From IMG/VR virus record IMGVR_UViG_3300017917_002374, positions 1 through 64,000 of that record: 64,000 nucleotides of DNA. One strand, written 5' to 3'. A model generated the notes under the pieces. It had not been told where the DNA came from. It saw only the letters and a program-made list of their open reading frames with translations, and ran no database searches. Every line of letters begins with the position of its first letter. Within the stretch, counting starts at the first letter, position 1. Both the position numbers and the translations under genes were made by a program. Positions 12,525 through 50,345 of the stretch are shown piece by piece.

Positions 12525-12873
12525 CAATTTTATTACTCCACCAGATTTCGTTGACAACAACTTACCAACTATATTGGTAGTTGATGCTGCTTGGGATGAT
12601 ATAGAAACTCTAGCATTGTATTGTCAAAATTCAAATTATCTTTATAATGTGTATATCTATCAAGATGTGATGTTCGATACCGAATGGCTGCAACAAGCTG
12701 CACTAAGATCACATGCCATAATCATGAACTCAGATCAAAGTGCATGCACCAACGAAAAAAATAAATTTTTGAAAGAATCTAAAACTTGGTATTACGGTCC
12801 TAATCGTTATCTAGGCAACAACAATCAGTTGCAATCTTTGATTGAATTTTTTATAAAACATAATGAACAATAA
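12517..12873 (+). CDS. Hypothetical protein
   Basis: Overlapping packing with both neighbours. Confidence 0.6.
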   Translation: MHSNFITPPDFVDNNLPTILVVDAAWDDIETLALYCQNSNYLYNVYIYQDVMFDTEWLQQAALRSHAIIMNSDQSACTNEKNKFLKESKTWYYGPNRYLGNNNQLQSLIEFFIKHNEQ

Positions 12874-14071
12874 TGTACACCATGTGCTGTGCAATTTTTG
12901 TGGTAAAAGTCGCAGCGAAGTAGACAAACTTATCGTGGCCAATGACGCCGGTATATGCAACGAGTGTATTGAGTTTTGTGCAGATCTCTTGAATCGCGAA
13001 CGTATCAAAAATATTCAATCTGATAAGAAAATTTCAAGATCACTTGATGCAGTCAAACTCAAGAACTATCTTGATGAGTATATTATTGGTCAAGAGCAGG
13101 CCAAGATAGCTCTAGCAGTGGCAGTGGTCAATCACTACAAAAGAATTTATTTTCAACCCGACATAGAACTAGAAAAAAGCAATCTGCTGATATATGGTCC
13201 TACTGGTGTTGGTAAAACCATGCTGGCAAAAACTGTAGCCAAATATCTAAATGTGCCATTTGTGATTGCTGATGCTACCACTCTTACTCAGGCAGGATAT
13301 GTAGGCGATGATGTTGAAAGTGTGATTTCAAGATTGTTTAGCGAAGCAGATTTTGACATTGACAAGTGCCAACAGGGCATAGTGTTTATTGACGAAATTG
13401 ATAAAATCAGTAGAAAAAATGAAAGCAGTAATCTGCACCGTGATGTAGGCGGCGAGGGTGTGCAACAGGCCCTGCTCAAGCTGGTCGAAGGTACCAAATG
13501 CACTGTGAGTGTGGAGTCAAGAAAAAAACACCCCAGTGTTGATACTGTGGAAATAGACACAAAAAATATTCTTTTTGTTGCAGGTGGAGCATTTGACGGG
13601 CTGGAAAAAGTGGTATCCGCTAGAGCCAAAGGCAACAGCATAGGATTTACATCTCAGGCTGTGGAAAATTCTTCTGGCCAGGTGTTGGCCGAAGATTTTA
13701 TCAACTACGGCATGATTCCTGAATTTATAGGCAGATTTCCTGTTACAGTAAGTGTTAATGCACTGGGACTAGAAGATCTAACAAGAGTGCTAGTTGAACC
13801 TAAAAGTAGTTTACTGCAACAAATGCAGTGGTATTTCAACACCGATGACATTGAGTTAGAGTTTGAAGATCAAGCAGTTCTAGCTATTGCACAACAGGCT
13901 CTGGACAGAGGAATTGGAGCAAGAGGACTTAAAACCATTTTAGAGCAGTGTCTTATGCCTGTTATGTATTCTTTGAACGAACTGAAAACTCAAGGTATAA
14001 GTAAAGTGAGGATTACTAAAAAAGTAATTACAGAAAATCAAAAACCGGAATTTATTAAACATGAGAGATAA
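12863..14071 (+). CDS. clpX: ClpX AAA+ unfoldase
   Basis: CNFC/CNEC zinc domain, GPTGVGKT, GYVG pore loop, DEIDK, RKKHP, IGF loop, GARGL. Confidence 0.96.
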   Translation: MNNNVHHVLCNFCGKSRSEVDKLIVANDAGICNECIEFCADLLNRERIKNIQSDKKISRSLDAVKLKNYLDEYIIGQEQAKIALAVAVVNHYKRIYFQPDIELEKSNLLIYGPTGVGKTMLAKTVAKYLNVPFVIADATTLTQAGYVGDDVESVISRLFSEADFDIDKCQQGIVFIDEIDKISRKNESSNLHRDVGGEGVQQALLKLVEGTKCTVSVESRKKHPSVDTVEIDTKNILFVAGGAFDGLEKVVSARAKGNSIGFTSQAVENSSGQVLAEDFINYGMIPEFIGRFPVTVSVNALGLEDLTRVLVEPKSSLLQQMQWYFNTDDIELEFEDQAVLAIAQQALDRGIGARGLKTILEQCLMPVMYSLNELKTQGISKVRITKKVITENQKPEFIKHER

Positions 14072-14297
14072 ACCACCTTTTTTAAATGGATCCATTGTTG
14101 TGGTTGTAAACGACAACGTGGAAAAAGCTCTGCGCAAGCTGAAAAAGAAAGTGCAAGAAAGCGGCATTCTTCAAGAGTTGCGTGAAAGAGAACAGTACGA
14201 AAAACCAACCACTTCTAGAAAACGAGCCAAAAACGCAGCACGTCGTCGTTGGCAGAAAAAACTGGAAAGCGAGCAGTTGCCTAAAAAACTGTTCTAA
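14061..14297 (+). CDS. rpsU: Ribosomal protein bS21
   Basis: VEKALRKLKKKVQESGIL.ELRERE.YEKPT. Confidence 0.93.
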   Translation: MRDKPPFLNGSIVVVVNDNVEKALRKLKKKVQESGILQELREREQYEKPTTSRKRAKNAARRRWQKKLESEQLPKKLF

Positions 14298-14548
14298 TGT
14301 ATATTGAATTTTGGTTGCCCAGCGGTGCAGGAGGTGTTGCTGCTTCGTATGCTAGCAGTGTGATACAACGAGAGATCAAGTCCTGGGCATCAAAATACAA
14401 TGTGGTCTACCGAACCAAGATAGTAAAGTACACTCTTAGACTATCGTTCAATAACAGTGAAGACTATGTGCATTTCCAGTTGAGCTGGAATCCTGACAAT
14501 GTTTTTGCCACTCGTTACTCCATTATAGAACCTGGCCAAATAAATTGA
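14297..14548 (+). CDS. Hypothetical protein
   Basis: TAATG coupling to rpsU. Confidence 0.55.
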   Translation: MYIEFWLPSGAGGVAASYASSVIQREIKSWASKYNVVYRTKIVKYTLRLSFNNSEDYVHFQLSWNPDNVFATRYSIIEPGQIN

Positions 14549-14603
14549 CTTTTGAGAGTCAATCATGTATAAATACACATGTAAGATGCCTACGGGGTCT
14601 TGC
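14545..14603 (+). promoter_or_regulatory. Composite early/late promoter and structured leader of hsp20
   Basis: TTGACT(14545)-17-TATAAA with full TATAAATA (14568); hairpin with c(UACG)g loop at 14581-14603. Confidence 0.6.
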
Positions 14604-14637
14604 AAGCCAATTACTTGCTTATTGAAAGGAGAAAAAA

Positions 14638-15075
14638 ATGGCTACTATTCTAACTCTAGATCTACCTACGCTGCATCGTCGTTTTATTGGTTTTGATCAA
14701 TTCTTTGACGAAATAGAGCGTACATTTAATGTGCAAAAACAAGACAACTATCCTCCTCATAACATAGTGCGTATCAATGACACACATTTCATGATTGAAT
14801 TAGCTGTGGCAGGATTCGCCGAGGACGAGTTAGATGTTAGTTTGTACAACAATAAATTGATTGTTAAAGGCGAACGCAAGCGAGACATTGATGAAGCTTG
14901 GCAGTATCTACACCGAGGTATTGCCAGTAGAGACTTTGAACGCAGCTTTCCTCTTAACGAAAATGTTGAAGTCAAACAGGTTACTGTGCAAAATGGTATC
15001 ATGACTATTAATTTGGAATTGGTTGTTCCTGAGGAACAAAAAGCCAAAAAGATAGCAATTACCTTTGCCAAGTAA
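14638..15075 (+). CDS. Small heat-shock protein Hsp20 (IbpA-like)
   Basis: IGFD, NYPPHNI, ELAVAGF, YLHRGIASRDFERSF, NGIMTINL. Confidence 0.95.
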   Translation: MATILTLDLPTLHRRFIGFDQFFDEIERTFNVQKQDNYPPHNIVRINDTHFMIELAVAGFAEDELDVSLYNNKLIVKGERKRDIDEAWQYLHRGIASRDFERSFPLNENVEVKQVTVQNGIMTINLELVVPEEQKAKKIAITFAK

Positions 15076-15122
15076 TATAATAGTGGGTGCAACATCGCAC
15101 CCACTATATCAAAGAGGAAACA

Positions 15123-15446
15123 ATGGGAAACGCAGATACTTTGACCAAAACACAAAGCAGTCTTAAAATTGAACCAAAATTAAATATTCCTGAACCACGG
15201 TTATGGAAAGTGATTTTTATCAATGATGAAATCACTACCATGGAATTTATCATAGAAGTTCTAAAAAACATATTTGATTACGACGAAGATCAAGCTCAGA
15301 ACATGACCATGAGAATACACCAAGAGGGTGCAGGTGTAATCGCAATTTATCCGCATGAAATCGCAGAACAAAAAGGTATTGAAACCACTTTGCTTGCAAG
15401 AAACAATGGATTCCCACTACAGGTTAAACTAGAACCAGAAGGATAA
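15123..15446 (+). CDS. clpS: ClpS N-end-rule adaptor
   Basis: WKVIFINDEITTMEFI, IHQEG, EIAEQK, GFPL. Confidence 0.92.
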   Translation: MGNADTLTKTQSSLKIEPKLNIPEPRLWKVIFINDEITTMEFIIEVLKNIFDYDEDQAQNMTMRIHQEGAGVIAIYPHEIAEQKGIETTLLARNNGFPLQVKLEPEG

Positions 15447-15448
15447 TC

Positions 15449-16006
15449 ATGGATGTAATGTTGGACTTAGAAACTCTAAGCACAAGACCCGAAAGCGTTA
15501 TTCTTACCATTGGTGCAGTAAAATTTGATCCTTGGGGCGAGGATGTGGATGCAGAACACGGACTTTACTTTCGTGTGAACGTTGATCAACAACTTGCTCT
15601 CGGGCGTCATGTGCAAGAAGAAACTATACAGTGGTGGAGTAAACAACCAGCAGAAGTTTTTGAAGAAGCCATGGGCGAAAATGATCGTGTGGGTTTAGAA
15701 GATATGACTGCTGGACTCAATCGTTTTCTAGTAGGAGTAAACAACATCTGGTGCCAAGGTCCTGCATTTGATATTGTGATTCTAGAAAATCTTTACAGAC
15801 AATTGGTCAAGCCCACTCCCTGGCAGTTTTGGCAAATTCGCGACAGTCGTACACTGTTTGGTGTACACGGCGATCCAAGAGAAAAAGATCGTAAGGCAGC
15901 ACATAATGCACTCATGGACTGTTACTATCAAGCCATTGGTGTACAGCAGATATATAAACAGGCAAAAGTGCCCAACCCCAAGGAGAGAGCTTATGCCCAT
16001 GTATGA
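15449..16006 (+). CDS. DEDDh 3'-5' exonuclease (DexA/Rv2179c-like)
   Basis: MLDLETL, FDIVIL, RDSRT, HNALMD. Confidence 0.9.
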   Translation: MDVMLDLETLSTRPESVILTIGAVKFDPWGEDVDAEHGLYFRVNVDQQLALGRHVQEETIQWWSKQPAEVFEEAMGENDRVGLEDMTAGLNRFLVGVNNIWCQGPAFDIVILENLYRQLVKPTPWQFWQIRDSRTLFGVHGDPREKDRKAAHNALMDCYYQAIGVQQIYKQAKVPNPKERAYAHV

Positions 16007-16211
16007 AGACAGCATAATAGAGAAACTGGAAGAATTAGCCAGTTTGATACGAGTATTAGACACACGAATTCAATTTGTGCAGCAGGACATAGAAGAACTG
16101 AAACAAGGTGAACTAACTGCTATAAAATTGTGTGTTGAACAGTTGGCTCAAAAACAGTTAGAAGAAGTTCATGATAACACAGCCAAACGATGGACTGTAG
16201 AAAGACTATAA
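15999..16211 (+). CDS. Small coiled-coil hypothetical protein
   Basis: Fills the gap between neighbours; start uncertain. Confidence 0.45.
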   Translation: MYEDSIIEKLEELASLIRVLDTRIQFVQQDIEELKQGELTAIKLCVEQLAQKQLEEVHDNTAKRWTVERL

Positions 16212-16546
16212 TGCAAATAGTATTTGGAAAAGAAACAGTAGAGCAACTGAAAGAAAAATACACTGTGTTGGAACTGGAAAAAATTTCCACACCAAGTGGA
16301 ACTCTTGAACCATATTGCGTGATTCCTGTTGAACAGATTGCTCTTAATCTGTCACACATTGAGCATGATATTCAACTACACGAGAAGTTTGTTCAAGCTA
16401 TTAAAGACAATGATGTAAAATTGTGTTTGGATCTGCATGAACATCTTGTTGGTAAATTTGGTGGCGAACTAGACAGCTTTTACGACATTGTAACACAACG
16501 TTGCCGAGACACTGGCAGCGCACAATTGGTACTACCGCAGCAGTAA
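16211..16546 (+). CDS. Hypothetical protein
   Basis: Coupled ORF (TAATG). Confidence 0.6.
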   Translation: MQIVFGKETVEQLKEKYTVLELEKISTPSGTLEPYCVIPVEQIALNLSHIEHDIQLHEKFVQAIKDNDVKLCLDLHEHLVGKFGGELDSFYDIVTQRCRDTGSAQLVLPQQ

Positions 16547-16624
16547 TCATAAACATATTACATTTAGATTACAAGTCATGAAATATATACTGTATGGGTA
16601 GATTTGACTGCCCAGGGGTGTTTC

Positions 16625-16966
16625 ATGAAAAATTTACTAGCTGCCATCTTACTGGCCACTCTAGCCACGGCAGCTAACGCAGAGCCAAGACCTAGAAAAA
16701 TTCAAATGATGTGTGGCAGCTTTGAGGATGTTGAAGCTACCATGAACAAATACGGCGAAAAAATGGTTATTGCCACACAAGCGCCTAACGAGCAAACAGT
16801 TAACATGCTGTATGCGAATTTTGAAACACAAACTTCCAGCTGGTTTATTCATGACCTACAAACCGATGAGTACTGTATGGTTGGTGTAGGAAAAGCTGTG
16901 TATATACCAGATGATAGTGCCCTACAAAAAGGCACCGGAGTTGGATTAAAAGTAACTTACAAATAA
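16625..16966 (+). CDS. Secreted hypothetical protein
   Basis: Signal peptide MKNLLAAILLATLATAANA. Confidence 0.65.
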   Translation: MKNLLAAILLATLATAANAEPRPRKIQMMCGSFEDVEATMNKYGEKMVIATQAPNEQTVNMLYANFETQTSSWFIHDLQTDEYCMVGVGKAVYIPDDSALQKGTGVGLKVTYK

Positions 16967-16989
16967 GCCTGGAAATTCCAGGCTTTTTT
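16965..16989 (+). terminator. Rho-independent terminator
   Basis: aagcctgga-aat-tccaggctt followed by T run. Confidence 0.75.
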
Positions 16990-17009
16990 ATGATCATAAG
17001 GAGCATGCC

Positions 17010-17087
17010 ATGAGCTGGTTTTCACATAGACCCAAACGAAATCCACCAACTCCACCGCAGCCCACACATCCTCCGCACAGAATGTAA
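17010..17087 (+). CDS. 25-aa proline-rich peptide MSWFSHRPKRNPPTPPQPTHPPHRM (not in ORF track)
   Basis: SD aaggag 6 nt before ATG; 8 of 25 residues are Pro. Confidence 0.55.
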   Translation: MSWFSHRPKRNPPTPPQPTHPPHRM

Positions 17088-17152
17088 ATAAATACTGTTG
17101 TTTTCAACGATTCCTGCCCTTCAAAATAATAACAAAATGGAATCAATGAGTC

Positions 17153-17929
17153 ATGGATCCGTTAACACTGTTTGCACTGGCAAATGGCGCGGTCAAACTT
17201 GTAAAGGAAGGCTGTAAACTTTACAAGGACATAAAAGGAGCTGCCGGGGACATTAAAGATGTACTCGCAGATCTTGATGACCAATTTCACAACAAATTCC
17301 GAGATCGTGCTCCTACTGTCGCGGAAAAAAATCAGTTCATCACTGAAAAAAATCGCATAATTGAACTTAACAAAAAGGCCGGCGACACTACCAACATCTA
17401 CACAGAAATTGGTCAGCAGTTGGGTGCATACTTTGACAACTACTACAAGTGCAAGGCTATATTTGAAGAAGAAGAACGACGTAGTAAAACAGAAGTATAC
17501 CACGGCGAAGATAGTATAGGCAAACGTGCATTACAACGTGTTTTGCTAAAAAAACAGCTTCAGCACATGGGCGAAGAACTGCGTGAAATCATGGTCTATA
17601 ACAGTCCGCCAGAACTGGGTGCTTTATGGACTGAAGTAGACGAAATGATGCAAAAAGTTGGCAAGGAGCAAGCAGGTGCTATTGCCATACAAATGAGAGC
17701 AGATGCTGAAGCTAAAAAACGAGCCTATCGTCGTAGAAAGAAAATACAGTACAAGATCATGTGCTGGACTATGAGCACTGTGGGTGTGTTATATTTGGTA
17801 TGGTTGATCTGGGCAGTGGTACAAGTGCGCATAGAAAAATATCCTGAACTAGGCGTGTGTTTGCTGCCCAAAGGAACACCTGGGTATAATTTTTATAATA
17901 ATTTAAAATGGGTAGACTGCGATAAGTAA
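17153..17929 (+). CDS. Helical hypothetical protein with C-terminal TM
   Basis: 258 aa; TAAATA upstream. Confidence 0.65.
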   Translation: MDPLTLFALANGAVKLVKEGCKLYKDIKGAAGDIKDVLADLDDQFHNKFRDRAPTVAEKNQFITEKNRIIELNKKAGDTTNIYTEIGQQLGAYFDNYYKCKAIFEEEERRSKTEVYHGEDSIGKRALQRVLLKKQLQHMGEELREIMVYNSPPELGALWTEVDEMMQKVGKEQAGAIAIQMRADAEAKKRAYRRRKKIQYKIMCWTMSTVGVLYLVWLIWAVVQVRIEKYPELGVCLLPKGTPGYNFYNNLKWVDCDK

Positions 17930-18126
17930 ACTTACAGAGATTGCTTATGCCAATTTTTATTAATTTTTTTAGTTTTTGGATATTGATGACCTGGACCTTG
18001 CATCGCGGTGATCCAATTGGCGCAGTGTTAACTATAATTACTTTCCTCATAATGCATGGTTTCTGCGAAGAACTTGTAGACAACAGCACTGGTTTATCAT
18101 AGTATTAGACTTTTTTGACAAGCAGA

Positions 18127-18954
18127 ATGATGCGAAAACTACTAGCCTTCTTTTTACTTTTTTGTACACAAGCAGCGGCTGCCCCTTTAACTGCAAAAAG
18201 CTGGTTGGTCACAGATGGCGAAGGAAATTTCATAGCCGGCGAAAACATGTTTGATGTTAGAAGCATTGCCAGTGTTACCAAGCTGATGACCGTGGTTACC
18301 ATACTGGACAGCAAGCTAGAACTAGACAGTCCACTCAATATCAAACTTACCACTTATAGTAAAAAAAATCGCAAGGTCAAATCCAGTCCTTACGACAATA
18401 CTACTAGACGCCAGTTGATTGATCTAGCCATGGTACGCAGTGACAATAATGCTGCACGTTTGTTATGTACCACTTATCCCACAGGATACGATGGTTGTAT
18501 AAGAGACATGAATATCAAGGCACGCAGTTTGGGCATGATCAACAGTGTGTTTTATGATCCTACAGGGCTAGATGATAGAAACAACAGTACCGCCAAGGAT
18601 CTGGTTCTTCTGGTACAATCTGGACACTTGCACCCAGAAGTTGTGTCCGCCAGTCAAAAAAGCAAAATACAAATCAAGATCAAAAAACGCTGGTTTTTAG
18701 GAAGAAATACCAATCCCTTGATTGGTACCAAACATGACATTCAAGTGAGCAAAACCGGTTGGACCACTCGAGCCGGTGGGTGTATTGTGATGCTCATGGA
18801 TACAGATCGCGGTCGCCGCATAGTGATAGTGTTGGGCAGTCGCAGTATCAAAACCAGAATTCCCGAAGCAGAATTTATTTCAACAATTGAAGGTTCTCCT
18901 GAAGAAAAACTACAACAACAAGAACCTTCAAACTTGTGGCGCCGGTGGTTTTAG
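18127..18954 (+). CDS. Peptidase S11 D-Ala-D-Ala carboxy/endopeptidase (PBP7-like)
   Basis: Signal peptide; SVTK (SxxK), SDN (SxN), KTG. Confidence 0.92.
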   Translation: MMRKLLAFFLLFCTQAAAAPLTAKSWLVTDGEGNFIAGENMFDVRSIASVTKLMTVVTILDSKLELDSPLNIKLTTYSKKNRKVKSSPYDNTTRRQLIDLAMVRSDNNAARLLCTTYPTGYDGCIRDMNIKARSLGMINSVFYDPTGLDDRNNSTAKDLVLLVQSGHLHPEVVSASQKSKIQIKIKKRWFLGRNTNPLIGTKHDIQVSKTGWTTRAGGCIVMLMDTDRGRRIVIVLGSRSIKTRIPEAEFISTIEGSPEEKLQQQEPSNLWRRWF

Positions 18955-19009
18955 TTTGCTCACCCATAATTCTTTGAACCCTATATAAATATTATTAACG
19001 AGGAGCATC

Positions 19010-19735: not shown

Positions 19736-19738
19736 TAT

Positions 19739-21001: not shown

Positions 21002-21032
21002 CAATTCAAGTTACAAAAATTAAAATCTTATA

Positions 21033-21737
21033 ATGCTATTCTTATTTGATGTAGATGGTACTCTTACACCCAGCCGAGGTACCATGGATCCAGAATTCAA
21101 ACATTGGCTGTGGCACGAGTTCAAACATCCTATTAGGCTAATCACTGGCAGCGATCCAGAAAAAACTCAAGAACAAATTGGCATGGATTTCTGGAGTGAT
21201 TGTTTTGTGTACAATTGTGCTGGCAATCATGTGTTTGATCACGGTAAAGAAATTTTCCGCAGCGAATGGCGTTTGCCTGCAGATCTAGAATGGATTCTAC
21301 AGGCCAAACTGTTTGCCAGTCCTTGGTTGATTCGCACAGGCAAGCATCTAGAACATAGGACCGGGCTGTGCAACTTTAGTATTGTGGGGCGTAACGCCAC
21401 TCCTGAACAGCGCAAAATGTATTACGATTGGGACTGTATAACTAAAGAACGAGAAATTCTAGCCAAACTGATCAACATGGTTTGGGGAGCCACAGTTGAA
21501 GCCACAGTAGCAGGCGAGACTGGCATTGACATATATCAACGCGGGGCAGGCAAGGATCAGATTTTGGACCAAGTGACAGAACTAGGACCTATCCATTTTT
21601 TTGGCGATCGGCAAGATCCAGCAGGCAATGATTACAAACTAGCACAAGTTATCTTGACAAAAAATGCAGGTCAGTGTTATCATGTTAAAAACTGGCAACA
21701 CACCTGGGATCTTTTGAAAGAACTTAATGACAATTAA
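21033..21737 (+). CDS. HAD-IIB phosphomannomutase-like enzyme
   Basis: FDVDGTLT, TGSD, NFSIVGRNA, FFGD...GND. Confidence 0.88.
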   Translation: MLFLFDVDGTLTPSRGTMDPEFKHWLWHEFKHPIRLITGSDPEKTQEQIGMDFWSDCFVYNCAGNHVFDHGKEIFRSEWRLPADLEWILQAKLFASPWLIRTGKHLEHRTGLCNFSIVGRNATPEQRKMYYDWDCITKEREILAKLINMVWGATVEATVAGETGIDIYQRGAGKDQILDQVTELGPIHFFGDRQDPAGNDYKLAQVILTKNAGQCYHVKNWQHTWDLLKELNDN

Positions 21738-22758
21738 ACGCATTGGCTTTGCTTGTAAATGGCTCACAGATCCAGCAGAAGTTGCTGGTGCTAAACCTGC
21801 TGCCACAGACCACAACACTCGTTCAACCACTGTGGCCTGGCTTAACCGTCAACCCAAAGATGAAGCTGTGCAAAGACTTTGGGATATTGTTCGTCATAAC
21901 ATTGCAGCAACACAACGTCTTGTAGAAAGGGTAGGCAGCTATGATCTCTCACGTCGCATGGTTCGTATTGGCAGCGATATTCTGCCTATGTACACTCAGC
22001 CTGATTGGAGCTGGTTTTATCAGCAACCGGATGTTAGAGCTTATGCCGAGAAGCATTTTGCTGATGTGGGGCGGGTGGCTCGCGCCCTTGATGTGCGCCT
22101 CAGTTTTCATCCTGGCCAGTATTGTGTTCTTGCAAGTGAGTCTGATAACATCGTTGAACGTAGTATTGAAGAATTTGAGTACCATGTAGACATGGCTCGC
22201 TGGATGGGCTACGGTGCCACCTGGCATGAGCATGGTTTTAAAATTAATGTGCATTTAAGCGGGCGCGGTGGTCCCGACAAATTTCTAGCCACACTGGGAA
22301 GGCTCACACCAGAAGCTAGAAATTTAATCACCATTGAAAATGATGAGATGAAATATGGACTTGATTATACTCTTGCTGTCAGTAAACATGTGGCTCTTGT
22401 TCTCGATCTTCATCATCACTGGGTCAACTCGGGGGAGTATATTGTGGCGACAGACGATCGTGTTCAGCGTGTTATTGACAGCTGGCGTGGTTCTCGTCCT
22501 GTTCTGCACTACTCTGTTAGTAGGGAAGATATTCTTGTGGATCATTGTACCCGATCTAGGCCCGATCTTCACGCACTTATTGGAAGAGGCCATAAGAAAC
22601 AGCAGCTTAGGGCGCACAGCGACTTCTATTGGAATGAAGCTGTGAACGAGTGGGCGTTGGAATTTGGTGATGAGTTTGATACCATGTGTGAAAGCAAGGC
22701 CAAAAATTTAGCCAGCTTCGCATTATACGAACTGGCTAAATCCAAGAACATAATCTAG
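21727..22758 (+). CDS. uvsE: UV damage endonuclease
   Basis: RIGFACK, RLSFHPGQY, TIENDE, LDLHHH, RAHSD, ESKAKN. Confidence 0.92.
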   Translation: MTIKRIGFACKWLTDPAEVAGAKPAATDHNTRSTTVAWLNRQPKDEAVQRLWDIVRHNIAATQRLVERVGSYDLSRRMVRIGSDILPMYTQPDWSWFYQQPDVRAYAEKHFADVGRVARALDVRLSFHPGQYCVLASESDNIVERSIEEFEYHVDMARWMGYGATWHEHGFKINVHLSGRGGPDKFLATLGRLTPEARNLITIENDEMKYGLDYTLAVSKHVALVLDLHHHWVNSGEYIVATDDRVQRVIDSWRGSRPVLHYSVSREDILVDHCTRSRPDLHALIGRGHKKQQLRAHSDFYWNEAVNEWALEFGDEFDTMCESKAKNLASFALYELAKSKNII

Positions 22759-22759
22759 A

Positions 22760-23059
22760 TTACTTCTTGGTTTTTGGCTTGGCAGTTTTTTTGGCTGCTG
22801 TTTTAACTTTGGCTACAGTTTCTTTTGCCTTGCGAGTGGTCTTTTTAACCACTTCAACCGCATCAGCTGCATCAACTTTGCCATCCTTGTTTACATCAGC
22901 AACTTGTGCTACGGTTTGCGTGAGCACAGGTGCAACGCTCAAGGCATCTTTAGCATCAACTTTACCGTCCTTGTTTAAGTCCAGAGGCTTTTTGCTGTTA
23001 TTCACGTAAAGCAGATAGCCCACTACTACAAATACAACTAGGCCAATTAGAATTTCCAT
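22760..23059 (-). CDS. Membrane-anchored protein with two EF-hand/dockerin-type Ca loops and Lys-rich tail
   Basis: N-terminal TM; DLNKDGKVDAKD and DVNKDGKVDAAD; SD and TAAATA upstream on the minus strand. Confidence 0.75.
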   Translation of the reverse strand: MEILIGLVVFVVVGYLLYVNNSKKPLDLNKDGKVDAKDALSVAPVLTQTVAQVADVNKDGKVDAADAVEVVKKTTRKAKETVAKVKTAAKKTAKPKTKK

Positions 23060-23231
23060 TTAAATCTCCTTGTAAGGTATAAAATATTTAGCGATCAAAT
23101 TAAACACACAAAATCTTAATCTGGGCAGATAAAATTTGCTGCGCTGCAATAAATACTATATAATGATGCATGTGATGCCCAGGTGGGGTCATTTCAGCAT
23201 TATGGAACATTTCGTCTAAAAGGAGAAACTC

Positions 23232-23510
23232 ATGTTCAACGCATACGAAACAGTAATTGACGCAGTTACCGCTGCCAAAAAAACCGCAATCGCAACTTTT
23301 GTAAGAAACGACACTGTGGCAGACAGTCTGACCAAATGGACTGATACTGAAGCAGCCGTGGCCAAAAATATCATCAAGGCCAGTGTGGAAACAGCCACAG
23401 TGATTGGTACTGAAGTTACCAAGGCCGTGCAAGAAGCTGCCAAGGTTGACCTGAGCAAAGGTTTTACGACCTGGGCACAGGATGTGCAAAAGACCAGCAA
23501 AGCCAAATGA
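23232..23510 (+). CDS. Ala-rich amphipathic helical protein (phasin-like, tentative)
   Basis: Strong SD; composition only. Confidence 0.5.
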   Translation: MFNAYETVIDAVTAAKKTAIATFVRNDTVADSLTKWTDTEAAVAKNIIKASVETATVIGTEVTKAVQEAAKVDLSKGFTTWAQDVQKTSKAK

Positions 23511-23665
23511 TTTTTAAAATTGTAGAGCATATTGCAGATCAATTTCGTCCAAATCTCCAAAGTGATTTGGAAAGATGGTTACAATATCAAAATCCAACAA
23601 ACGGCGCAGATCTTGAACGGTTGATCAAGGAATACACCTACAAAGATCTAGGCATGCGGTTGTAA
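23507..23665 (+). CDS. 52-aa protein (DUF3563-like, tentative; not in ORF track)
   Basis: ATGA coupling; LERWLQYQNPTNGADLERLIKEY. Confidence 0.5.
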   Translation: MIFKIVEHIADQFRPNLQSDLERWLQYQNPTNGADLERLIKEYTYKDLGMRL

Positions 23666-23735
23666 AAAAAGCAACGAAAACGGGCAGAAATGCCCGTTTT
23701 TTATGGTTGACCTAAATTCTTGCTTTTGCTAAAAT
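23659..23735 (+). promoter_or_regulatory. Terminator + early promoter cassette
   Basis: gttg-taaaaaaag-caac box, hairpin cgggca-gaaa-tgcccg-T6, TTGACC(23707)-17-TAAAAT. Confidence 0.7.
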
Positions 23736-23760
23736 AAGGTTGTGTTTAAATTTTAAGAGG

Positions 23761-23970
23761 ATGATCATGAACATCAGAATGCAAAGTGTTAGCGGATTTG
23801 TAATTGTTTTGATTCTTGCAATATTAATAATTTTGCTAGCACCCTTGGCAGTGATCTGGGCTATTAACACTCTAGTGTCCACAGCGGCTATTCCTTACAC
23901 TCTGGAAACCTGGGCAGCCAGCATTATAATTTGCAGCGTGTTTGGTGTGGGCAAGGTAAAAACCAATTGA
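23761..23970 (+). CDS. Small 2-TM membrane protein
   Basis: Hydrophobic segments; follows the early promoter. Confidence 0.55.
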   Translation: MIMNIRMQSVSGFVIVLILAILIILLAPLAVIWAINTLVSTAAIPYTLETWAASIIICSVFGVGKVKTN

Positions 23971-24025
23971 CTTTTTTGCCCAAAAGTGTATAATAACATT
24001 GTTATCAATATGTTGGACTGCGATC

Positions 24026-24178
24026 ATGAATCTAGCAAACAAAACTCCTGTAAAACAGTCTCGCACACGAGCACATCGGGTATTGTTTCTCAACGACAGT
24101 CCGTTTCGTTCTCGCACTGTTGAAAATAAAAAACAGTTTCGTCGTCAACCCAAGCATCGTTTTCAACAACCACTCTAA
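24026..24178 (+). CDS. ArfA-like alternative ribosome rescue factor, 50 aa (not in ORF track)
   Basis: MNLANKTPVKQSRTRAHRVLFLNDSPFRSRTVENKKQFRRQPKHRFQQPL compared with ArfA [27 protein letters not shown]; own promoter TTGACT(23967)-16-TATAAT. Confidence 0.55.
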   Translation: MNLANKTPVKQSRTRAHRVLFLNDSPFRSRTVENKKQFRRQPKHRFQQPL

Positions 24179-24188
24179 GGAGAAATCC

Positions 24189-24356
24189 ATGAGCAATTCC
24201 TTTTACAACACCGTGATGACCGTGGCCGATGAAGCTATCTTTGTACGGCAGCTGAACACAGAAGCAGCCATTAGGTATATCATAAACAAAACCGAAGCCA
24301 ACCGCGATATGGCGGCAGAAGCTCTGCGTCAGGTTGTGACTTTTTACAAACAATGA
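24189..24356 (+). CDS. Hypothetical protein
   Basis: SD aaggag before ATG 24189. Confidence 0.6.
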   Translation: MSNSFYNTVMTVADEAIFVRQLNTEAAIRYIINKTEANRDMAAEALRQVVTFYKQ

Positions 24357-24643
24357 CCAGACAGTTTATTTTCGCGGCGTTGATGGCCACTGGCAGCATG
24401 CAAGTGTTTGCTCAAACTGCAGGTTCTGCATCCAGTCTGGGCATTCAGCCCATGACCATAGATTGTGCTCAGGCAGCTGCCATGAGCCAAGAGCTTGAAG
24501 CTATTATTGCTGAACCCGGCAAACGCAACGCCACATGGGATCCCACGCTGTCATGGGTGGGCGGTATCAACTCTGCACAACAAAGGTTGGCCAGTGCCAA
24601 GACTGTGTTATGGAACATAAGAACACAATGCCGCGGATTTTGA
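24353..24643 (+). CDS. Secreted hypothetical protein
   Basis: Signal peptide ending VFA. Confidence 0.6.
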   Translation: MTRQFIFAALMATGSMQVFAQTAGSASSLGIQPMTIDCAQAAAMSQELEAIIAEPGKRNATWDPTLSWVGGINSAQQRLASAKTVLWNIRTQCRGF

Positions 24644-25191
24644 TTCTCCTGCTATTGGTAGCGGGCACTGCGCAAGCAGACTGTTACTATCGCAGCAGCA
24701 ACATCAGCCGACTGCGGGCACCCATTGAACGCATTGCTGATCTAGAGCGTACAGTGATGCCAGTAGGACAGGATCAAAATCGTTGTCGTGTGACATTTAG
24801 AGCCTTGATACAGAATCAATGGCACACAGTGGAAGGTGAAAGCACTGGTCCAATCACTACCAGTTTGGATCAAATCTGTGGGCAGGCTCTTAATCTTGGA
24901 CGCACTCAAATCTTAGATCGTGTGGCCGGTACAGATATCACAGCAGCTCAAGAAATGATCTGTACGGATCAACCTATTCCACGCACAAGAGATCTTGTGG
25001 CAGTGGGCGATACAGTGCGCGAAAGCGAAGTTCAACCGCATCCTGTGCATCGCAGAAGTTTTGGATATAGAGGTAGCGAGTGTAAATGGTTTGTGGAAAG
25101 TCGTCCAGAAAGCGGGCGGGTTGACATGAATCAAGGTATCATTTGTCGCGGATCCAAAGAACAGGATTGGCGAGTGGTTGACAAATGGTAG
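24628..25191 (+). CDS. Secreted Cys-containing hypothetical protein
   Basis: MPRILILLLLVAGTAQA signal; 6 Cys in the mature part. Confidence 0.65.
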   Translation: MPRILILLLLVAGTAQADCYYRSSNISRLRAPIERIADLERTVMPVGQDQNRCRVTFRALIQNQWHTVEGESTGPITTSLDQICGQALNLGRTQILDRVAGTDITAAQEMICTDQPIPRTRDLVAVGDTVRESEVQPHPVHRRSFGYRGSECKWFVESRPESGRVDMNQGIICRGSKEQDWRVVDKW

Positions 25192-25247
25192 ATTTTTTAG
25201 TAAACTGTGACAGTGGTAATCTTTATCAACTTCCGAAAGGAAACAAA

Positions 25248-26081
25248 ATGAAACGTATTATAGCAATCAGTGCAGTATCTGTAATTCTTGCAGCATGTAA
25301 CAGTGCGCCCAAACGTGCGGAGGCACCGCCCATTCCTAGTCCTACGCCGCCTGTGACCAAAGATGTCACGGTGCCTGTGCAAGGCAAAGTGGATGCTCCG
25401 CCTACTCTGGACATTCCAGCATGGTACATCAAGGCACCTGCCAGCACAGACGACTATGTGTTTGTCACAGGCACTGCGGTGAGTTCCGATCTTGCCATGA
25501 GCCGTACCAAGGCACTGCTGGACGCACAAGTACAGTTGGCTGACAAGATCAATGGCATGCTCAACGCCATAACCAAGCAAACTCGTAAGGATGACAGTGG
25601 ACAGGTTGGCATTGACCGTACCAGTCAAACTGTGAAAAAGCTGATCATTGACACAGCTCTCACAGGCTATCATCTAGAGGACAGTCGTGTGATGAGCGAA
25701 AATCGCAACTATCGTACCTTTGTGCTGGTGCGCTATCCGCTGGGCGATGCTAACCGTTTGCTCAAAGACAAACTGCAACGCGAACGTCAGGACAAGGACG
25801 ATGTTGACAATGCCCTAGATGAGCTGGAACGTGAAATCAACTCACGCAAGAAAAAGCCGGCTGCACCTGCTGCGCTTGATGACAAACAGAGTCAAGTGCA
25901 AGACGACAGCACTGTTCTTGCTCAAGCGGATCCTGTAAAACGTCCGCTGACCATAGATGAAATTGTGGCTATTGAAAAACAGCACAATCTAGTGGATACC
26001 AAAAACATGGATCTGCGCCGTCGTAGAGCCGAAGCACTTACCAAGCCCGGAGCAACTGTGCAGAGATTTACTGTGCAATAA
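25248..26081 (+). CDS. Lipoprotein, LPP20-like
   Basis: Lipobox LAAC; IPAWY, GTAVSSDLAMSRTKALLDA. Confidence 0.75.
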   Translation: MKRIIAISAVSVILAACNSAPKRAEAPPIPSPTPPVTKDVTVPVQGKVDAPPTLDIPAWYIKAPASTDDYVFVTGTAVSSDLAMSRTKALLDAQVQLADKINGMLNAITKQTRKDDSGQVGIDRTSQTVKKLIIDTALTGYHLEDSRVMSENRNYRTFVLVRYPLGDANRLLKDKLQRERQDKDDVDNALDELEREINSRKKKPAAPAALDDKQSQVQDDSTVLAQADPVKRPLTIDEIVAIEKQHNLVDTKNMDLRRRRAEALTKPGATVQRFTVQ

Positions 26082-26095
26082 CAGCTCTGCTCAAA

Positions 26096-26131
26096 AAAGC
26101 CCTCCTCGGTGTAAATACCAAGGGGGGCTTT
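26096..26131 (+). terminator. Terminator-like hairpin with a late promoter (TAAATA) in its loop
   Basis: aaagccctcctcggt-gTAAAT-accaaggggggcttt. Confidence 0.6.
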
Positions 26132-26134
26132 CTT

Positions 26135-26620
26135 ATGGCTAGACCAAATCCTATACGACGTATCATGCAATCCGCGCTGCCTAGTGTTACATATCAGCGA
26201 CAGAAACTTTTTAGGCCCTCTCCAAAAGATGTAAAATATGCGTATAAAATAATCAACAGGCATGTGTTTAACAATCAGCTGAAACTGCCACCTATCCAAC
26301 TGGGCGTGACCAGGGGCTATTGGGGCATGTGTATTGGGTTACACGAAGAAACTAGTCCTAACACTTTGTGCAGTCTAAAACTCAGCGACAAATACTTTTG
26401 TGTGCAATGGTTCATGAACACTCTGGCACACGAAATGGTACATCAATATCAATGGGACATCAATAGTGAATACAGACAGCAGCACGGACTGGAACCTTTG
26501 ATGAGCCACGGTCCTAGTTTTTTTGCCTGGCGTGATGTCATGGACTACTATGGACTGAGCTTGAAAACTGCACATGGACAGCGACGTTGGTTTGCACATC
26601 AAGATTTCAATAAGTGTTGA
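26135..26620 (+). CDS. SprT-like zinc metalloprotease
   Basis: TLAHEMVHQYQ, HGPSF. Confidence 0.85.
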   Translation: MARPNPIRRIMQSALPSVTYQRQKLFRPSPKDVKYAYKIINRHVFNNQLKLPPIQLGVTRGYWGMCIGLHEETSPNTLCSLKLSDKYFCVQWFMNTLAHEMVHQYQWDINSEYRQQHGLEPLMSHGPSFFAWRDVMDYYGLSLKTAHGQRRWFAHQDFNKC

Positions 26621-26670
26621 CAAACTTCCCGCAGTTCTCTATAATTGACTCTAGTTAACCAGGAGTCAGT

Positions 26671-27261
26671 ATGCCCCATTTTGTACCTACCGTATTAGAA
26701 AAAACCAGCAACGGCGAACGTGCGTATGATATTTACAGTCGCCTGCTTAAAGATCGTATTGTGATGCTGGACACAGATGTAAATGAACATTCAGCCAGCC
26801 TTGTGGTTAGCCAATTGTTGTTCCTAGAAAGTGAAAACCCTGATGCAGACATTCTTTTCTATATTAACAGCCCTGGTGGCGTGGTTACTGCTGGCATGGC
26901 TATCTATGATACTATGCAGTACATTAAACCTGACGTATCTACTATTGTAATGGGCCAGGCCTGCTCCATGGGCAGTTTGTTAGCACAAGCCGGCGCAGCA
27001 GGCAAACGCTATATTCTGCCCAATGCACGTCACATGATACACCAACCGTCAGGGGGTGCAGGTGGGCAAGCCACAGACATGGAAATTCAGGTGCGTGAGA
27101 TACTCAAAATGAAGCGTACACTTACAGAAATCTATGTCAAGCACAATAGTGCAGGCAAAGTGTATGACGAAATCCTAGCAGACATGGAACGTGATTTCTT
27201 TATGAGCGCACATGAAGCTGTGACGTATGGACTGGCAGATCAAGTGATTGAAACCAGATAA
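26671..27261 (+). CDS. clpP: ClpP protease subunit
   Basis: [24 protein letters not shown] (Ser), MIHQP (His), ERD (Asp); promoter TTGACA(26617)-17-TATAAT. Confidence 0.97.
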
Positions 27262-27282: not shown

Positions 27283-27318
27283 TAAATAATAGGAGACAGT
27301 TTGTCTCCTATTTTTTTA
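27283..27318 (+). promoter_or_regulatory. Late promoter TAAATA overlapping the 5' arm of a terminator hairpin at the head of the modular-protein cluster
   Basis: TAAATA 27283; aataggagaca-gtt-tgtctcctatt plus T run. Confidence 0.65.
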
Positions 27319-50330: not shown

Positions 50331-50345
50331 ATATACACTGTAATC

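What the first reader, a model, noticed from the sequence alone, without database searches (positions are those of the whole stretch)
12863..27261. A near-complete phage-encoded translation-rescue and proteolysis circuit
Seen: clpX-rpsU-orf-hsp20-clpS as one block, an intact clpP elsewhere, an ArfA-like ORF, and tmRNA at 50.3 kb. ClpS is present but its usual partner ClpA is not in the window. Known: each gene type has been reported in large phages. Inference: together they could form a phage-specific quality-control route (tag, unfold, degrade), and ClpS could redirect host ClpAP.
Basis: partly seen in the sequence, partly recalled or inferred. Interest (0 to 1): 0.6.

Follow-up and report, generated by a model that had tools for sequence, protein, structure and literature searches.

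The report
Jumbo phage Clp and ribosome-rescue genes

Summary
Every listed gene is real and looks intact: ClpX, S21, an unknown ORF, Hsp20 and ClpS in one block, ClpP, and a permuted tmRNA. The window is the first 64 kb of a complete 354,959-bp virus record.

The main correction is that the phage has its own ClpA, at 110.5-112.8 kb, beside DnaJ and near DnaK. ClpS therefore need not hijack host ClpA. SmpB, release factors, SspB and L/F-transferase were not found, so tagging and N-degron supply depend on the host.

The block is not new. Pseudomonas phage PA5oct has ClpX-S21-(2 ORFs)-Hsp20-ClpS, then ClpP, then DnaJ-ClpA in the same order. Phage ClpPs form one clade apart from 81 bacterial ClpPs.

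In five complete relatives ClpA, ClpP, tmRNA and the small peptide are all present. ClpX is present in only three.

Two items may be new:
- A conserved 50-aa protein (24026-24178) matches the ArfA core in profile comparison (P about 1e-4; 0 of 300 shuffles) but fails Pfam.
- The tmRNA writes a 33-residue "AKAST..." tag, a class found on 36 viral contigs.

No evidence ties this tag class to phage ClpX or DnaK.

The parts
12517..12873 (+). 118-aa ORF of unknown function, just upstream of clpX. In relatives that lack ClpX it sits directly before S21.
   Evidence: No Pfam or PHROG hit. Homologs lie upstream of ClpX or S21 in related loci. A promoter-like site matching 11 of 12 consensus positions lies inside it at 12621-12648.
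12863..14071 (+). ClpX unfoldase, 402 aa.
   Evidence: NF003745 scores 509.9 bits against a cut-off of 359. The four zinc-finger Cys, Walker A and B, the GYVG pore loop, a KKH version of the RKH loop and the IGF ClpP-docking loop all align with E. coli ClpX at 50% identity.
14061..14297 (+). Ribosomal protein bS21, 78 aa. It overlaps the end of clpX by 11 nt.
   Evidence: PF01165 scores 65.2 and TIGR00030 scores 65.8 against a cut-off of 28.95. PA5oct has the same overlapping ClpX-S21 arrangement.
14297..14548 (+). 83-aa ORF of unknown function.
   Evidence: No family hit. It is conserved only in the closest relatives.
14638..15075 (+). Small heat-shock protein, IbpA-like Hsp20, 145 aa.
   Evidence: PF00011 scores 64. 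The NF008013 IbpA model scores 124.9, below its equivalog cut-off of 212. It is conserved in all related loci.
15087..15446 (+). ClpS adaptor, 119 aa from a GTG start. An ATG 12 codons downstream is an alternative start.
   Evidence: PF02617 scores 90.3. The N-degron pocket residues N-D-E-x-T-x-M and His, and the Glu/Lys contacts to ClpA, align with E. coli ClpS. It is predicted to sit on the phage ClpA N-domain with score 0.87 against a best control of 0.00.
15449..16006 (+). Rv2179c-like 3'-5' exonuclease, 185 aa. It follows ClpS in all related loci with long enough flanks.
   Evidence: PF16473 scores 117.2 and phrog_255 'exonuclease' scores 164. Synteny is shown.
16190..16546 (+). 118-aa conserved ORF of unknown function, the last member of the conserved core block.
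   Evidence: It is present after the exonuclease in all related loci with long enough flanks. The AlphaFold2 model has mean pLDDT 80.9. It has no PDB fold match.
16965..16985 (+). Terminator-like hairpin that may close the clpX-to-lipoprotein transcription unit.
   Evidence: This is a consensus scan only.
23967..23994 (+). Promoter-like site, TTGACT-16-TATAAT, ahead of the small ArfA-like gene.
   Evidence: This is a consensus scan only.
24026..24178 (+). 50-aa basic protein with an ArfA-core-like motif (SPFRSRTVENKK-QFRRQPKHR). It is a candidate alternative ribosome-rescue factor.
   Evidence: It belongs to 35 protein clusters of 47-50 aa with 19 invariant columns, some on contigs up to 350 kb. 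It is present in 5 of 5 complete relatives. Against ArfA alignment A5, hhalign gives P = 1.3e-4 and probability 54%, and no column shuffle out of 300 reached the real score. It has no Pfam, NCBIfam or PDB hit.
26617..26645 (+). Perfect sigma-70 consensus (TTGACA-17-TATAAT) just upstream of clpP.
   Evidence: matching 12 of 12 positions. This is a consensus scan only.
26671..27261 (+). ClpP peptidase, 196 aa, the only ClpP in the genome.
   Evidence: PF00574 scores 266.9, and NF001368 scores 301.7 against a cut-off of 249. The Ser-His-Asp triad aligns with E. coli ClpP at 62% identity. It is the single copy. Phage ClpPs form one clade.
27288..27312 (+). Terminator-like hairpin directly after clpP.
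50318..50763 (+). Two-piece (circularly permuted) tmRNA gene. It encodes the tag AKASTTESAVKVTKARGFRFGGARVAAADAAFA. A promoter-like site lies at 50311-50339 and a terminator at 50718-50739.
   Evidence: ARAGORN. Rfam gives RF04321 at 90.6 and RF01850 at 87. The sequence shows the T-arm, the CCA end and the GCA resume codon. A tmRNA is present in 15 of 15 related IMG/VR records.

Best explanation
The region is part of an old, vertically inherited set of helper genes for protein upkeep and translation. It belongs to a lineage of freshwater jumbo phages of about 350 kb that shares this module with Pseudomonas phage PA5oct.

The phage makes its own ClpP barrel and two unfoldases that dock on it through IGF loops, ClpX and ClpA. 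ClpS binds the N-domain of the phage's own ClpA and hands it proteins with bulky N-terminal residues. An IbpA-like small heat-shock protein, DnaJ and (in this phage) DnaK hold or refold unfolded proteins. bS21 enters host ribosomes.

A two-piece tmRNA, charged and delivered by host enzymes and host SmpB, frees ribosomes stuck on broken mRNAs. It adds a 33-residue tag with a non-polar end that marks the fragment for proteolysis. A 50-aa ArfA-like peptide probably offers a second, tag-free release route through host RF2.

The likely purpose is to keep ribosomes and amino acids available, and to clear debris, while host mRNA and proteins are being destroyed and a very large virion is being built. 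The kit supplements and partly replaces host capacity. It is not autonomous.

Shown here: gene identity, intact motifs, conservation, shared ancestry and the missing partners. Inferred: who binds whom in the cell, when the genes are expressed, what the substrates are, and the ArfA-like activity.

The phage's own partners outside the window:
- ClpA, 763 aa, is at G000:110495-112786. TIGR02639 scores 824 bits. It has an N-domain, two AAA+ modules and an IGF loop, and lacks a ClpB middle domain.
- DnaJ lies directly upstream of ClpA.
- DnaK, 639 aa, is at 102807-104726.
- ClpS on the ClpA N-domain scores 0.87, with a best control of 0.00. The test's mark was reached by 51 of 78 solved complexes and 2 of 108 mismatched pairs. 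The three runs agreed in 100% of contacts and the partner's pLDDT was 93.

Shared ancestry:
- PA5oct has ClpX-S21-2 ORFs-Hsp20-ClpS, ClpP 8 kb further on, PhoH(-), and DnaJ-ClpA in the same order.
- Eleven phage ClpPs, PA5oct included, sit on one side of a branch with SH-aLRT 100 and length 0.97, apart from 81 bacterial ClpPs of many phyla.
- The nearest bacterial ClpPs are only 58-66% identical.

Conservation:
- The S21-Hsp20-ClpS-exonuclease-orf118b order holds in more than 30 loci.
- In records at least 90% complete, ClpA, ClpP, the permuted tmRNA and the small peptide are each present in 5 of 5.

Dependence on the host:
- SmpB is found in 0 of 16 records.
- No RF-1 domain, SspB or L/F-transferase is found.

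Transcription signals and habitat:
- Own promoter-like and terminator-like signals flank clpP, the small gene and the tmRNA.
- Near-identical DNA recurs in pond, lake, river and soil metagenomes of about nine studies other than the likely source.

ArfA likeness is supported.
Against: - No expression data exist, because no RNA run holds the sequence. Timing and activity are unknown.
- ClpX is missing from two complete relatives, which have a clean orf118a-S21 junction. At least that arm is dispensable.
- PA5oct lacks the tmRNA and the small peptide. The rescue and protease parts may therefore serve unrelated purposes.
- The ClpA, ClpS, Hsp20 and ClpP (TIGR00493) scores lie below NCBI's equivalog cut-offs. 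Specificities may differ from the bacterial enzymes.
- The tag of this phage ends in AFA and is 33 residues long, unlike the canonical ALAA degron. Degradation of tagged proteins is assumed, not shown.
- The ArfA-like protein lacks the KGKGSY motif and fails every curated model.
- The complex prediction may only reflect memory of solved ClpS-ClpA structures.
Confidence: 0.65

Rival explanations
1. One reading: an orthogonal, phage-specific circuit. The phage tmRNA writes a private tag, the long AKAST class. Only the phage's own Clp machinery reads that tag, so phage-directed tagging and degradation run beside the host system and apart from it.
For: The tag of this phage is 33 residues long and ends in AFA rather than ALAA. 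Thirty-six viral contigs carry tmRNAs with the same resume region, and the 34 that could be read in full give 25-34-residue tags starting AKAST, which shows selection on the peptide. The phage has its own ClpX, ClpA, ClpS and ClpP with intact docking loops. Unknown conserved ORFs in the block could be adaptors.
Against: Twelve of 15 related records write ordinary ANDxxFALAA-like tags. Tag type does not follow ClpX. G023 has ClpX and an ALAA tag. G009 lacks ClpX and has an ALVA tag. G012 has a long tag and no ClpX next to S21. All the long tags still end in non-polar residues typical of general C-terminal degrons. SmpB is missing everywhere. The conserved orf118b has no recognisable fold relative.
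Confidence: 0.12
2. The Clp genes serve host take-over rather than quality control. ClpAPS and ClpXP would be aimed at particular host proteins, such as defence proteins, regulators, or fragments made by a phage protease that expose N-degrons. The tmRNA and S21 would be unrelated translation helpers that happen to lie nearby.
For: ClpS with ClpA and ClpP is the invariant core, whereas ClpX, the main reader of ssrA tags, is optional. PA5oct keeps the Clp set without any tmRNA. clpP has a perfect host-type promoter, which fits early expression. The tmRNA lies 23 kb from clpP and 35 kb from clpS.
Against: No substrate, protease or N-degron-generating enzyme was found; L/F-transferase is absent. 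The block is embedded with general chaperones (Hsp20, DnaJ, DnaK), which points to bulk proteostasis. The tmRNA is present in all 15 related IMG/VR records together with the Clp genes.
Confidence: 0.18
3. The tmRNA gene is not a working rescue RNA. It would be a leftover of integration at a host ssrA site, or a decoy that soaks up host SmpB to shut down host trans-translation.
For: tmRNA genes are common integration sites, and phages can carry ssrA fragments. A tRNA-like-domain-only phage tmRNA (DS6A) has been discussed as a possible SmpB titrator (PMC4131195; PMC9004378). The phage has no SmpB of its own.
Against: The gene is full length, with a T-arm, a CCA end, a resume codon, an open tag frame and a stop, and its own promoter-like and terminator signals. 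It scores above Rfam thresholds in 15 of 15 relatives. The tag peptides are conserved at the amino-acid level. The genome is a 355-kb record with terminal repeats; I did not search it for an integrase.
Confidence: 0.05

Closest known systems
Pseudomonas phage vB_PaeM_PA5oct (Arenbergviridae, Wroclawvirus), GenBank MK797984.1
   Same: The gene order matches: ClpX overlapping S21, small ORFs, Hsp20, ClpS; then ClpP some kb downstream; then PhoH on the opposite strand and DnaJ-ClpA. The proteins are 41-55% identical. Its ClpP falls in the same phage-only clade. Its record marks ClpP as detected by ESI-MS/MS.
   Different: PA5oct has an FtsH gene, which is absent here. It has no tmRNA above the Rfam threshold, no homolog of the ArfA-like peptide and no DnaK. 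Its ClpX lacks the RKH-type loop and has MGF instead of IGF. It infects Pseudomonas aeruginosa, whereas this phage is an uncultured freshwater virus of unknown host.
[quoted passage not shown]
   Same: The published inventory of AP-J-162 lists six Clp ORFs, Hsp20, DnaJ, many tRNAs and a tmRNA in one phage genome. Atu_ph07 and the related Sinorhizobium phage Phosso have ClpA about 42% identical to this one.
   Different: These genomes are 470-490 kb and infect alphaproteobacteria. In AP-J-162, ClpX sits next to IF-3 and topoisomerase genes, not S21. I did not test whether the block order is kept.
Bacterial ClpXP, ClpAPS and tmRNA-SmpB quality control (E. coli model)
   Same: All catalytic and docking motifs are kept. 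ClpS is predicted to bind the ClpA N-domain through the same Glu/Lys face. The tmRNA has the standard tRNA-like and tag-coding parts.
   Different: There is no SmpB, SspB or L/F-transferase. The genes are scattered over 100 kb and mixed with S21, Hsp20 and an exonuclease. The tag is 33 residues ending in AFA, not AANDENYALAA. The phage ClpP lineage is separated from bacterial ClpPs by a long branch.
ArfA, alternative ribosome-rescue factor A (Pfam PF03889)
   Same: It is a small basic protein. The core [LF]-x-x-P-x-FR-x-R ... KK ... [YF]-x-R-x-x-KH aligns with ArfA residues 21-48. Short bacterial ArfAs that end right after KHR exist, for example L216.
   Different: It lacks the invariant KGKGS motif and scores below every curated threshold. 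It has an ordinary stop codon, so it would not be repressed by trans-translation as E. coli arfA is. Its activity is untested.
Phage-encoded tmRNAs (mycobacteriophage Bxz1 group, Bacillus phage G, Melnitz-like methylophages, huge phages)
   Same: tmRNA genes are known in about 2% of phage genomes. Two-piece forms occur mostly in aquatic phages (PMC9004378; PMC4131195). tmRNA and S21 have been reported in huge phages (PMC7162821).
   Different: Here the tmRNA matches the betaproteobacterial two-piece model (RF01850). It belongs to a tag class starting AKAST that I did not find described in the papers I read.

Membership tests
ClpX (AAA+ unfoldase of ClpXP) | N-terminal C4 zinc finger, a single AAA+ module with Walker A and B, a GYVG pore-1 loop, an IGF ClpP-docking loop, and an RKH loop. 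| tested here: met
   All align with E. coli ClpX. The RKH loop is present as KKH. NF003745 scores 509.9 against 359, and TIGR00382 scores 471.5 against 370.75.
ClpP (serine peptidase S14) | Ser-His-Asp catalytic triad and a family score above the curated cut-off. | tested here: met
   The triad aligns. PF00574 scores 266.9 and NF001368 scores 301.7 against 249. The TIGR00493 equivalog scores 287.2, just under its cut-off of 308.6. The prohead-protease model NF045542 scores only 99.7 against 120.
ClpS (N-degron adaptor of ClpA) | ClpS fold with the N-degron pocket (Asn, Asp, Thr, Met, His). | tested here: met
   PF02617 scores 90.3 against 23. The pocket residues are conserved, with D36 of E. 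coli replaced by Glu. NCBIfam equivalog cut-offs are not reached (74.6 against 143).
ClpS (N-degron adaptor of ClpA) | Binds the N-domain of a ClpA or ClpC partner. | tested here: inconclusive
   The fold test with the phage ClpA N-domain scores 0.87 against a best control of 0.00, and the interface uses ClpS residues 88-98. A homologous complex has been solved, so this shows likeness only and not measured binding.
ClpA (double-ring Clp ATPase) | Clp_N domain, two AAA+ modules, an IG[LF] ClpP-docking loop, and no ClpB middle domain. | tested here: met
   Pfam finds Clp_N, AAA, AAA_lid_9, AAA_2 and ClpB_D2-small. The IGF loop and pore loops align with E. coli ClpA at 42% identity over 763 aa. 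TIGR02639 scores 824 across its full length but falls below the equivalog cut-off of 993.
Two-piece tmRNA (trans-translation) | Covariance-model match above threshold, with a tRNA-like domain, a CCA end, a resume codon and a tag reading frame. | tested here: met
   RF04321 scores 90.6 against 47, and RF01850 scores 87 against 84. ARAGORN calls a permuted tmRNA. The sequence was read directly.
Two-piece tmRNA (trans-translation) | SmpB partner encoded alongside. | tested here: not met
   PF01668 is absent from this genome and from all 15 other records searched. Function would need host SmpB.
Two-piece tmRNA (trans-translation) | Tag ends in the canonical ClpX degron (A-L-A-A type). | tested here: not met
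   The tag ends ...AADAAFA. Most relatives end in ALAA.
ArfA (PF03889) | Match to the curated family model, including the KGKGSY motif. | tested here: not met
   There is no hit at E up to 10 in the genome or for the ORF. A PDB profile search does not find ArfA chains. The KGKGS motif is deleted in the alignment.
ArfA (PF03889) | Conserved core that occupies the mRNA channel and contacts RF2 (ArfA residues about 21-48). | tested here: inconclusive
   hhalign gives P = 1.3e-4 and probability 54% over 25 columns. The real score was 25.6, against column shuffles with mean 9.9 and maximum 19.8 (0 of 300 reached it).
ArfA (PF03889) | Releases non-stop ribosomes through RF2. | not testable with these tools
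   This needs an in vitro release assay or genetic complementation.
Ribosomal protein bS21 | Family model above the curated cut-off. | tested here: met
   TIGR00030 scores 65.8 against 28.95, and PF01165 scores 65.2 against 27.
Small heat-shock protein (Hsp20, IbpA/B) | Alpha-crystallin domain. | tested here: met
   PF00011 scores 64 against 20.8. The IbpA equivalog scores 124.9 against 212, so that cut-off is not reached.

The most novel reading that the evidence does not exclude
The phage lineage runs its own non-stop-ribosome programme with two new parts.

1. The first would be the first viral ArfA-type factor: a 50-aa peptide with a normal stop codon, so it is always on, that recruits host RF2 to stalled ribosomes.
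2. The second would be a phage-only class of long 'AKAST...' tmRNA tags. These would be read preferentially by the phage's own Clp unfoldases, or by one of the conserved unknown ORFs acting as an adaptor. Fragments made on phage-damaged host mRNAs would then be sorted into a phage-controlled degradation channel.
Probability: 0.12. Interest if true: 0.75.

Novelty: new member of a known kind. Interest (0 to 1): 0.45.

Why it matters
Jumbo phages carry many genes that look bacterial, and it is unclear which of them work together. This work shows three things.

- A complete Clp protease set (ClpP, ClpX, ClpA, ClpS) with chaperones is an old, inherited trait. It is shared by an abundant freshwater phage lineage and the cultured phage PA5oct, so PA5oct can serve as an experimental model for it.
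- The ribosome-rescue genes are a separate add-on.
- The kit cannot run without host SmpB and release factors.

If the small peptide proves to be a working ArfA analogue, it would be the first viral alternative rescue factor. It would also be a naturally minimal version of ArfA for structural study. The AKAST tag class offers a set of natural long degrons to test against Clp and Lon proteases.

Tried and rejected
1. Phage ClpX co-varies with non-canonical tag ends. This looked promising, because G000 and G003-5 have ClpX and odd tags. It fails: G023 has ClpX and ANDSQFALAA, G009 lacks ClpX and has ...ALVA, and G012 has a long tag with no ClpX beside S21.

2. The long AKAST tag goes with phage DnaK. 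All five DnaK-bearing records have AKAST tags, and none of the 12 short-tag records has DnaK. However, two near-complete AKAST genomes (G343, G345) have no DnaK. The tag therefore does not need DnaK, and shared descent was not excluded.

3. ClpP replaced by a bacterial copy in some lineages. Two score classes (about 270 and about 210 bits) suggested this. The tree puts all phage ClpPs in one clade, and the low-score class merely shares an insertion with PA5oct.

4. Direct ArfA identification failed by every route tried: Pfam, NCBIfam, PHROGs, PDB sequence and profile searches, and the protein atlas.

5. Function of the unknown ORFs. orf118a, orf83, orf118b, the 193-aa ORF after DnaK and the 246-aa ORF after ClpA give nothing informative in Pfam or PHROGs; the only match is the 193-aa ORF's hit to a PHROG of unknown function. 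The orf118b model (pLDDT 81) has no PDB match at E <= 0.001.

6. A weak Clp_N hit in ORF 3590-5425 (E 0.069) was not confirmed by Pfam or NCBIfam.

7. Recent capture from a host. The nearest bacterial ClpPs are 58-66% identical and spread over many phyla, which gives no host signal.

8. Stop-codon recoding suggested by a tRNA with anticodon CUA. Coding density under code 11 is 93%, and TAG ends 11 of 108 long ORFs.

9. Expression. No RNA run holds the sequence.

10. Genes not found in this genome: FtsH, GroEL, SspB, L/F-transferase, RF-1-domain proteins and SmpB.

Full report
**What the window is.** The window is the first 64 kb of a 354,959-bp IMG/VR virus record. The record has 99-bp direct terminal repeats and a CheckV completeness of 100%. 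Genes run almost entirely on the + strand. PHROG hits include rIIA, a DNA ligase and a virion protein. The genome holds 30 tRNA genes and one tmRNA gene. Near-identical DNA recurs in pond, lake, river and soil metagenomes from about nine studies besides the probable source. No RNA run holds it. It is therefore a real, recurrent, uncultured freshwater jumbo phage.

**Check of the observation.** Pfam and NCBIfam confirm each named gene at the stated place:
- ClpX, 12863-14071
- bS21, 14061-14297, overlapping clpX by 11 nt
- an 83-aa ORF with no family, 14297-14548
- an IbpA-like Hsp20, 14638-15075
- ClpS, 15087-15446
- ClpP, 26671-27261

An Rv2179c-like 3'-5' exonuclease follows ClpS at 15449-16006. 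The tmRNA at 50318-50763 is of the circularly permuted, two-piece kind (RF04321 90.6 bits, RF01850 87 bits).

**Are the genes intact?** Alignment with the E. coli proteins, fetched from NC_000913.3, shows the defining residues in each.
- ClpX has the four zinc-finger cysteines, Walker A and B, GYVG, a KKH version of the RKH loop, and the IGF loop.
- ClpP has the Ser-His-Asp triad.
- ClpS has the N-degron pocket, with Asp36 replaced by Glu, and the Glu/Lys face that contacts ClpA.

**The missing partner is not missing.** A search of the whole genome for the Clp_N domain found a 763-aa ORF at G000:110495-112786.
- It matches the ClpA model over its full length (TIGR02639, 824 bits).
- It has an N-domain, two AAA+ modules, both pore loops and an IGF ClpP-docking loop. 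It has no ClpB middle domain.
- A CbpA/DnaJ-type co-chaperone lies directly upstream.
- A full DnaK lies 6 kb further upstream, at 102807-104726.

A fold test of the phage ClpA N-domain with phage ClpS gave a score of 0.87, with a best control of 0.00. The three runs agreed fully and the partner's pLDDT was 93. The test's mark was reached by 51 of 78 solved complexes and 2 of 108 mismatches. Homologous complexes have been solved, so this shows likeness and not measured binding.

**What is absent.** None of the following was found in the genome:
- SmpB
- the ArfA Pfam family
- FtsH
- L/F-transferase
- RF-1-domain proteins, meaning release factors or ArfB
- SspB
- GroEL

There is a single ClpP. 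SmpB is also absent from all 15 other records searched. By established knowledge tmRNA needs SmpB, ArfA needs RF2, and many N-degrons are made by L/F-transferase. The set is therefore host-dependent, and 'near-complete' overstates it.

**The ArfA-like ORF.** The only candidate is a 50-aa basic ORF at 24026-24178. A TTGACT-16-TATAAT site precedes it, and another small ORF with a good ribosome-binding site follows it.
- It is a real gene. There are 35 protein clusters of 47-50 aa with 19 invariant columns, some on contigs up to 350 kb. It is present in all five complete relatives.
- Curated models and PDB searches do not link it to ArfA, and the protein atlas shows only viral hypothetical proteins.
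- Its profile aligns to exactly the conserved ArfA core (residues 21-48). Against E. coli ArfA alone, P = 0.0025.
- Against an 11-sequence ArfA alignment that includes three divergent bacterial ArfAs, P = 1.3e-4 and probability 54%.
- Three hundred column shuffles gave a mean score of 9.9 and a maximum of 19.8, against 25.6 for the real alignment.
- It lacks the KGKGS motif and has a normal stop codon.

I rate it a plausible ArfA analogue, not a shown one.

**Relatives and co-occurrence.** tblastn against GenBank phages found ClpA and ClpS in the PA5oct group, in Sinorhizobium phage Phosso, in Agrobacterium phage Atu_ph07 (ClpA only) and in a few others. The PA5oct record shows the same layout:
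- ClpX overlapping S21, two ORFs, Hsp20, ClpS
- FtsH
- ClpP
- PhoH on the minus strand
- DnaJ-ClpA

A paper on Sinorhizobium phage AP-J-162 lists six Clp ORFs, Hsp20, DnaJ and a tmRNA (PMC11242549).

In IMG/VR, 80 loci encode ClpS at 51-77% identity. In all loci with long enough flanks the order S21-Hsp20-ClpS-exonuclease-orf118b is kept. ClpX precedes S21 in only some of them; in the others orf118a abuts S21.

Presence in 16 whole records, five of them at least 90% complete, was as follows:

| Feature | Complete records with it | Other observations |
|---|---|---|
| ClpA | 5 of 5 | |
| ClpP | 5 of 5 | |
| Permuted tmRNA | 5 of 5 | 15 of 15 IMG/VR records; not in PA5oct |
| Small ArfA-like peptide | 5 of 5 | not in PA5oct |
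| ClpX | 3 of 5 | |
| DnaK | 1 of 5 | |

A ClpP tree puts all 11 phage sequences, PA5oct included, on one side of a branch with SH-aLRT 100 and length 0.97. On the other side are 81 bacterial ClpPs from many phyla. The Clp/S21/Hsp20/DnaJ set is therefore old and vertically kept. ClpX and DnaK come and go. The tmRNA and the small peptide characterise the freshwater lineage only.

**The tag.**
- Most relatives encode ordinary proteobacterial-type tags: ANDEQFALAA, ANDSQFALAA, ANDSVYALAA and ANDSSFAIAA.
- One group has ...FLMVA, and one has ...ALVA.
- G012, G014 and G031 have a 28-residue tag, AKASTLGTVKVSMGRGFRFARGTEAVAA.
- This phage has a related 33-residue tag ending in AFA.
- A scan for the resume region found 36 viral contigs; in 34 of them the tag reads in full as 25-34 residues that start AKAST and end in non-polar residues (FAV, LAV, VLA, VAA, LAA).
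- I tested whether tag class follows phage ClpX or phage DnaK. Neither held (see Tried and rejected).

**Mechanism.** The most likely reading is a helper kit.
- The phage supplies its own ClpP, both unfoldases and the ClpS adaptor for its own ClpA, plus holdase and foldase chaperones and bS21.
- It adds ribosome-rescue capacity through a tmRNA that works with host SmpB, and probably through an ArfA-like peptide that works with host RF2.
- Consensus promoter-like and terminator-like sites frame clpP, the small gene and the tmRNA as separate units. That fits transcription by host RNA polymerase but does not show it.
- The exonuclease next to ClpS suggests a reason for the rescue genes. Nucleic-acid breakdown during infection would create non-stop messages and stalled ribosomes. 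This step is inference.

**Literature.**
- tmRNA, SmpB and S21 have been reported in huge phages (PMC7162821).
- About 2% of phage genomes carry a tmRNA, and two-piece forms are mostly aquatic (PMC9004378).
- Earlier lists of phage tmRNAs exist (PMC4131195).
- I found no paper that combines ClpS, phage-encoded and N-degron, and none on a phage ArfA.

**Verdict.** The core is a new member of a known kind, the PA5oct-type proteostasis module together with a phage tmRNA. Two leads are worth a bench test: the ArfA-like peptide and the AKAST tag class.

Noticed in passing
window 50318-50763; loci L229-L264: The tmRNA tag belongs to a class of long tags that start AKAST. Thirty-six IMG/VR contigs share the 19-nt resume region, and in 34 of them the tag reads in full at 25-34 residues. 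The middles vary and often alternate hydrophobic and basic residues, for example GEVTVSGKGVKFSARTVKAESFAV. The ends are FAV, LAV, VLA, VAA, LAA or AFA.
   Followed up: partly
G000:102807-104726 (outside the window); G012, G014, G350, G352: A phage DnaK is found only in records whose tmRNA has an AKAST tag: 5 of 5 DnaK-bearing records, and 0 of 12 short-tag records. Two near-complete AKAST genomes lack DnaK. In G012 the dnaK gene sits between S21 and Hsp20, whereas here it is near DnaJ-ClpA.
   Followed up: partly
G000:318225-318298 (outside the window): ARAGORN calls this tRNA 'Pyl'. It has anticodon CUA and would read TAG. Coding density and stop-codon use give no sign of recoding.
   Followed up: partly
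window 16190-16546: This 118-aa ORF always follows the exonuclease in the conserved block. Its AlphaFold2 model is confident (pLDDT 81; a small sheet plus three helices), but it has no PDB fold match.
   Followed up: yes
window 22760-23059 (- strand): A 99-aa protein on the opposite strand has an N-terminal hydrophobic segment, two dockerin/EF-hand-like calcium-binding repeats and a lysine-rich tail.
   Followed up: no
window 18115-18954, 21033-21737, 21727-22758, 26135-26620: Bacterial-type genes lie between the Clp block and clpP: a D-Ala-D-Ala carboxypeptidase (S11), a phosphomannomutase-like protein, a UvdE UV endonuclease and a SprT-like metalloprotease.
   Followed up: no
window 26617-26645 and 27288-27312: clpP is framed by a perfect TTGACA-17-TATAAT site and a strong terminator-like hairpin. 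It looks like a single-gene unit read by host RNA polymerase.
   Followed up: no
G001:C1:22717-23220: One relative carries a second, divergent ClpP-like ORF (100 bits) 1.2 kb from its main clpP.
   Followed up: no
window 43472-45646 and 61257-62600: An rIIA-like protein (phrog_612, 424 bits) and an ATP-dependent DNA ligase are present. Four ORFs of 620-803 aa at 30279-38998 have no PHROG match.
   Followed up: no
G003-G005 tmRNA loci (L095, L097, L131): These ClpX-bearing relatives end their tag with ...FLMVA, followed by two stop codons in tandem.
   Followed up: no
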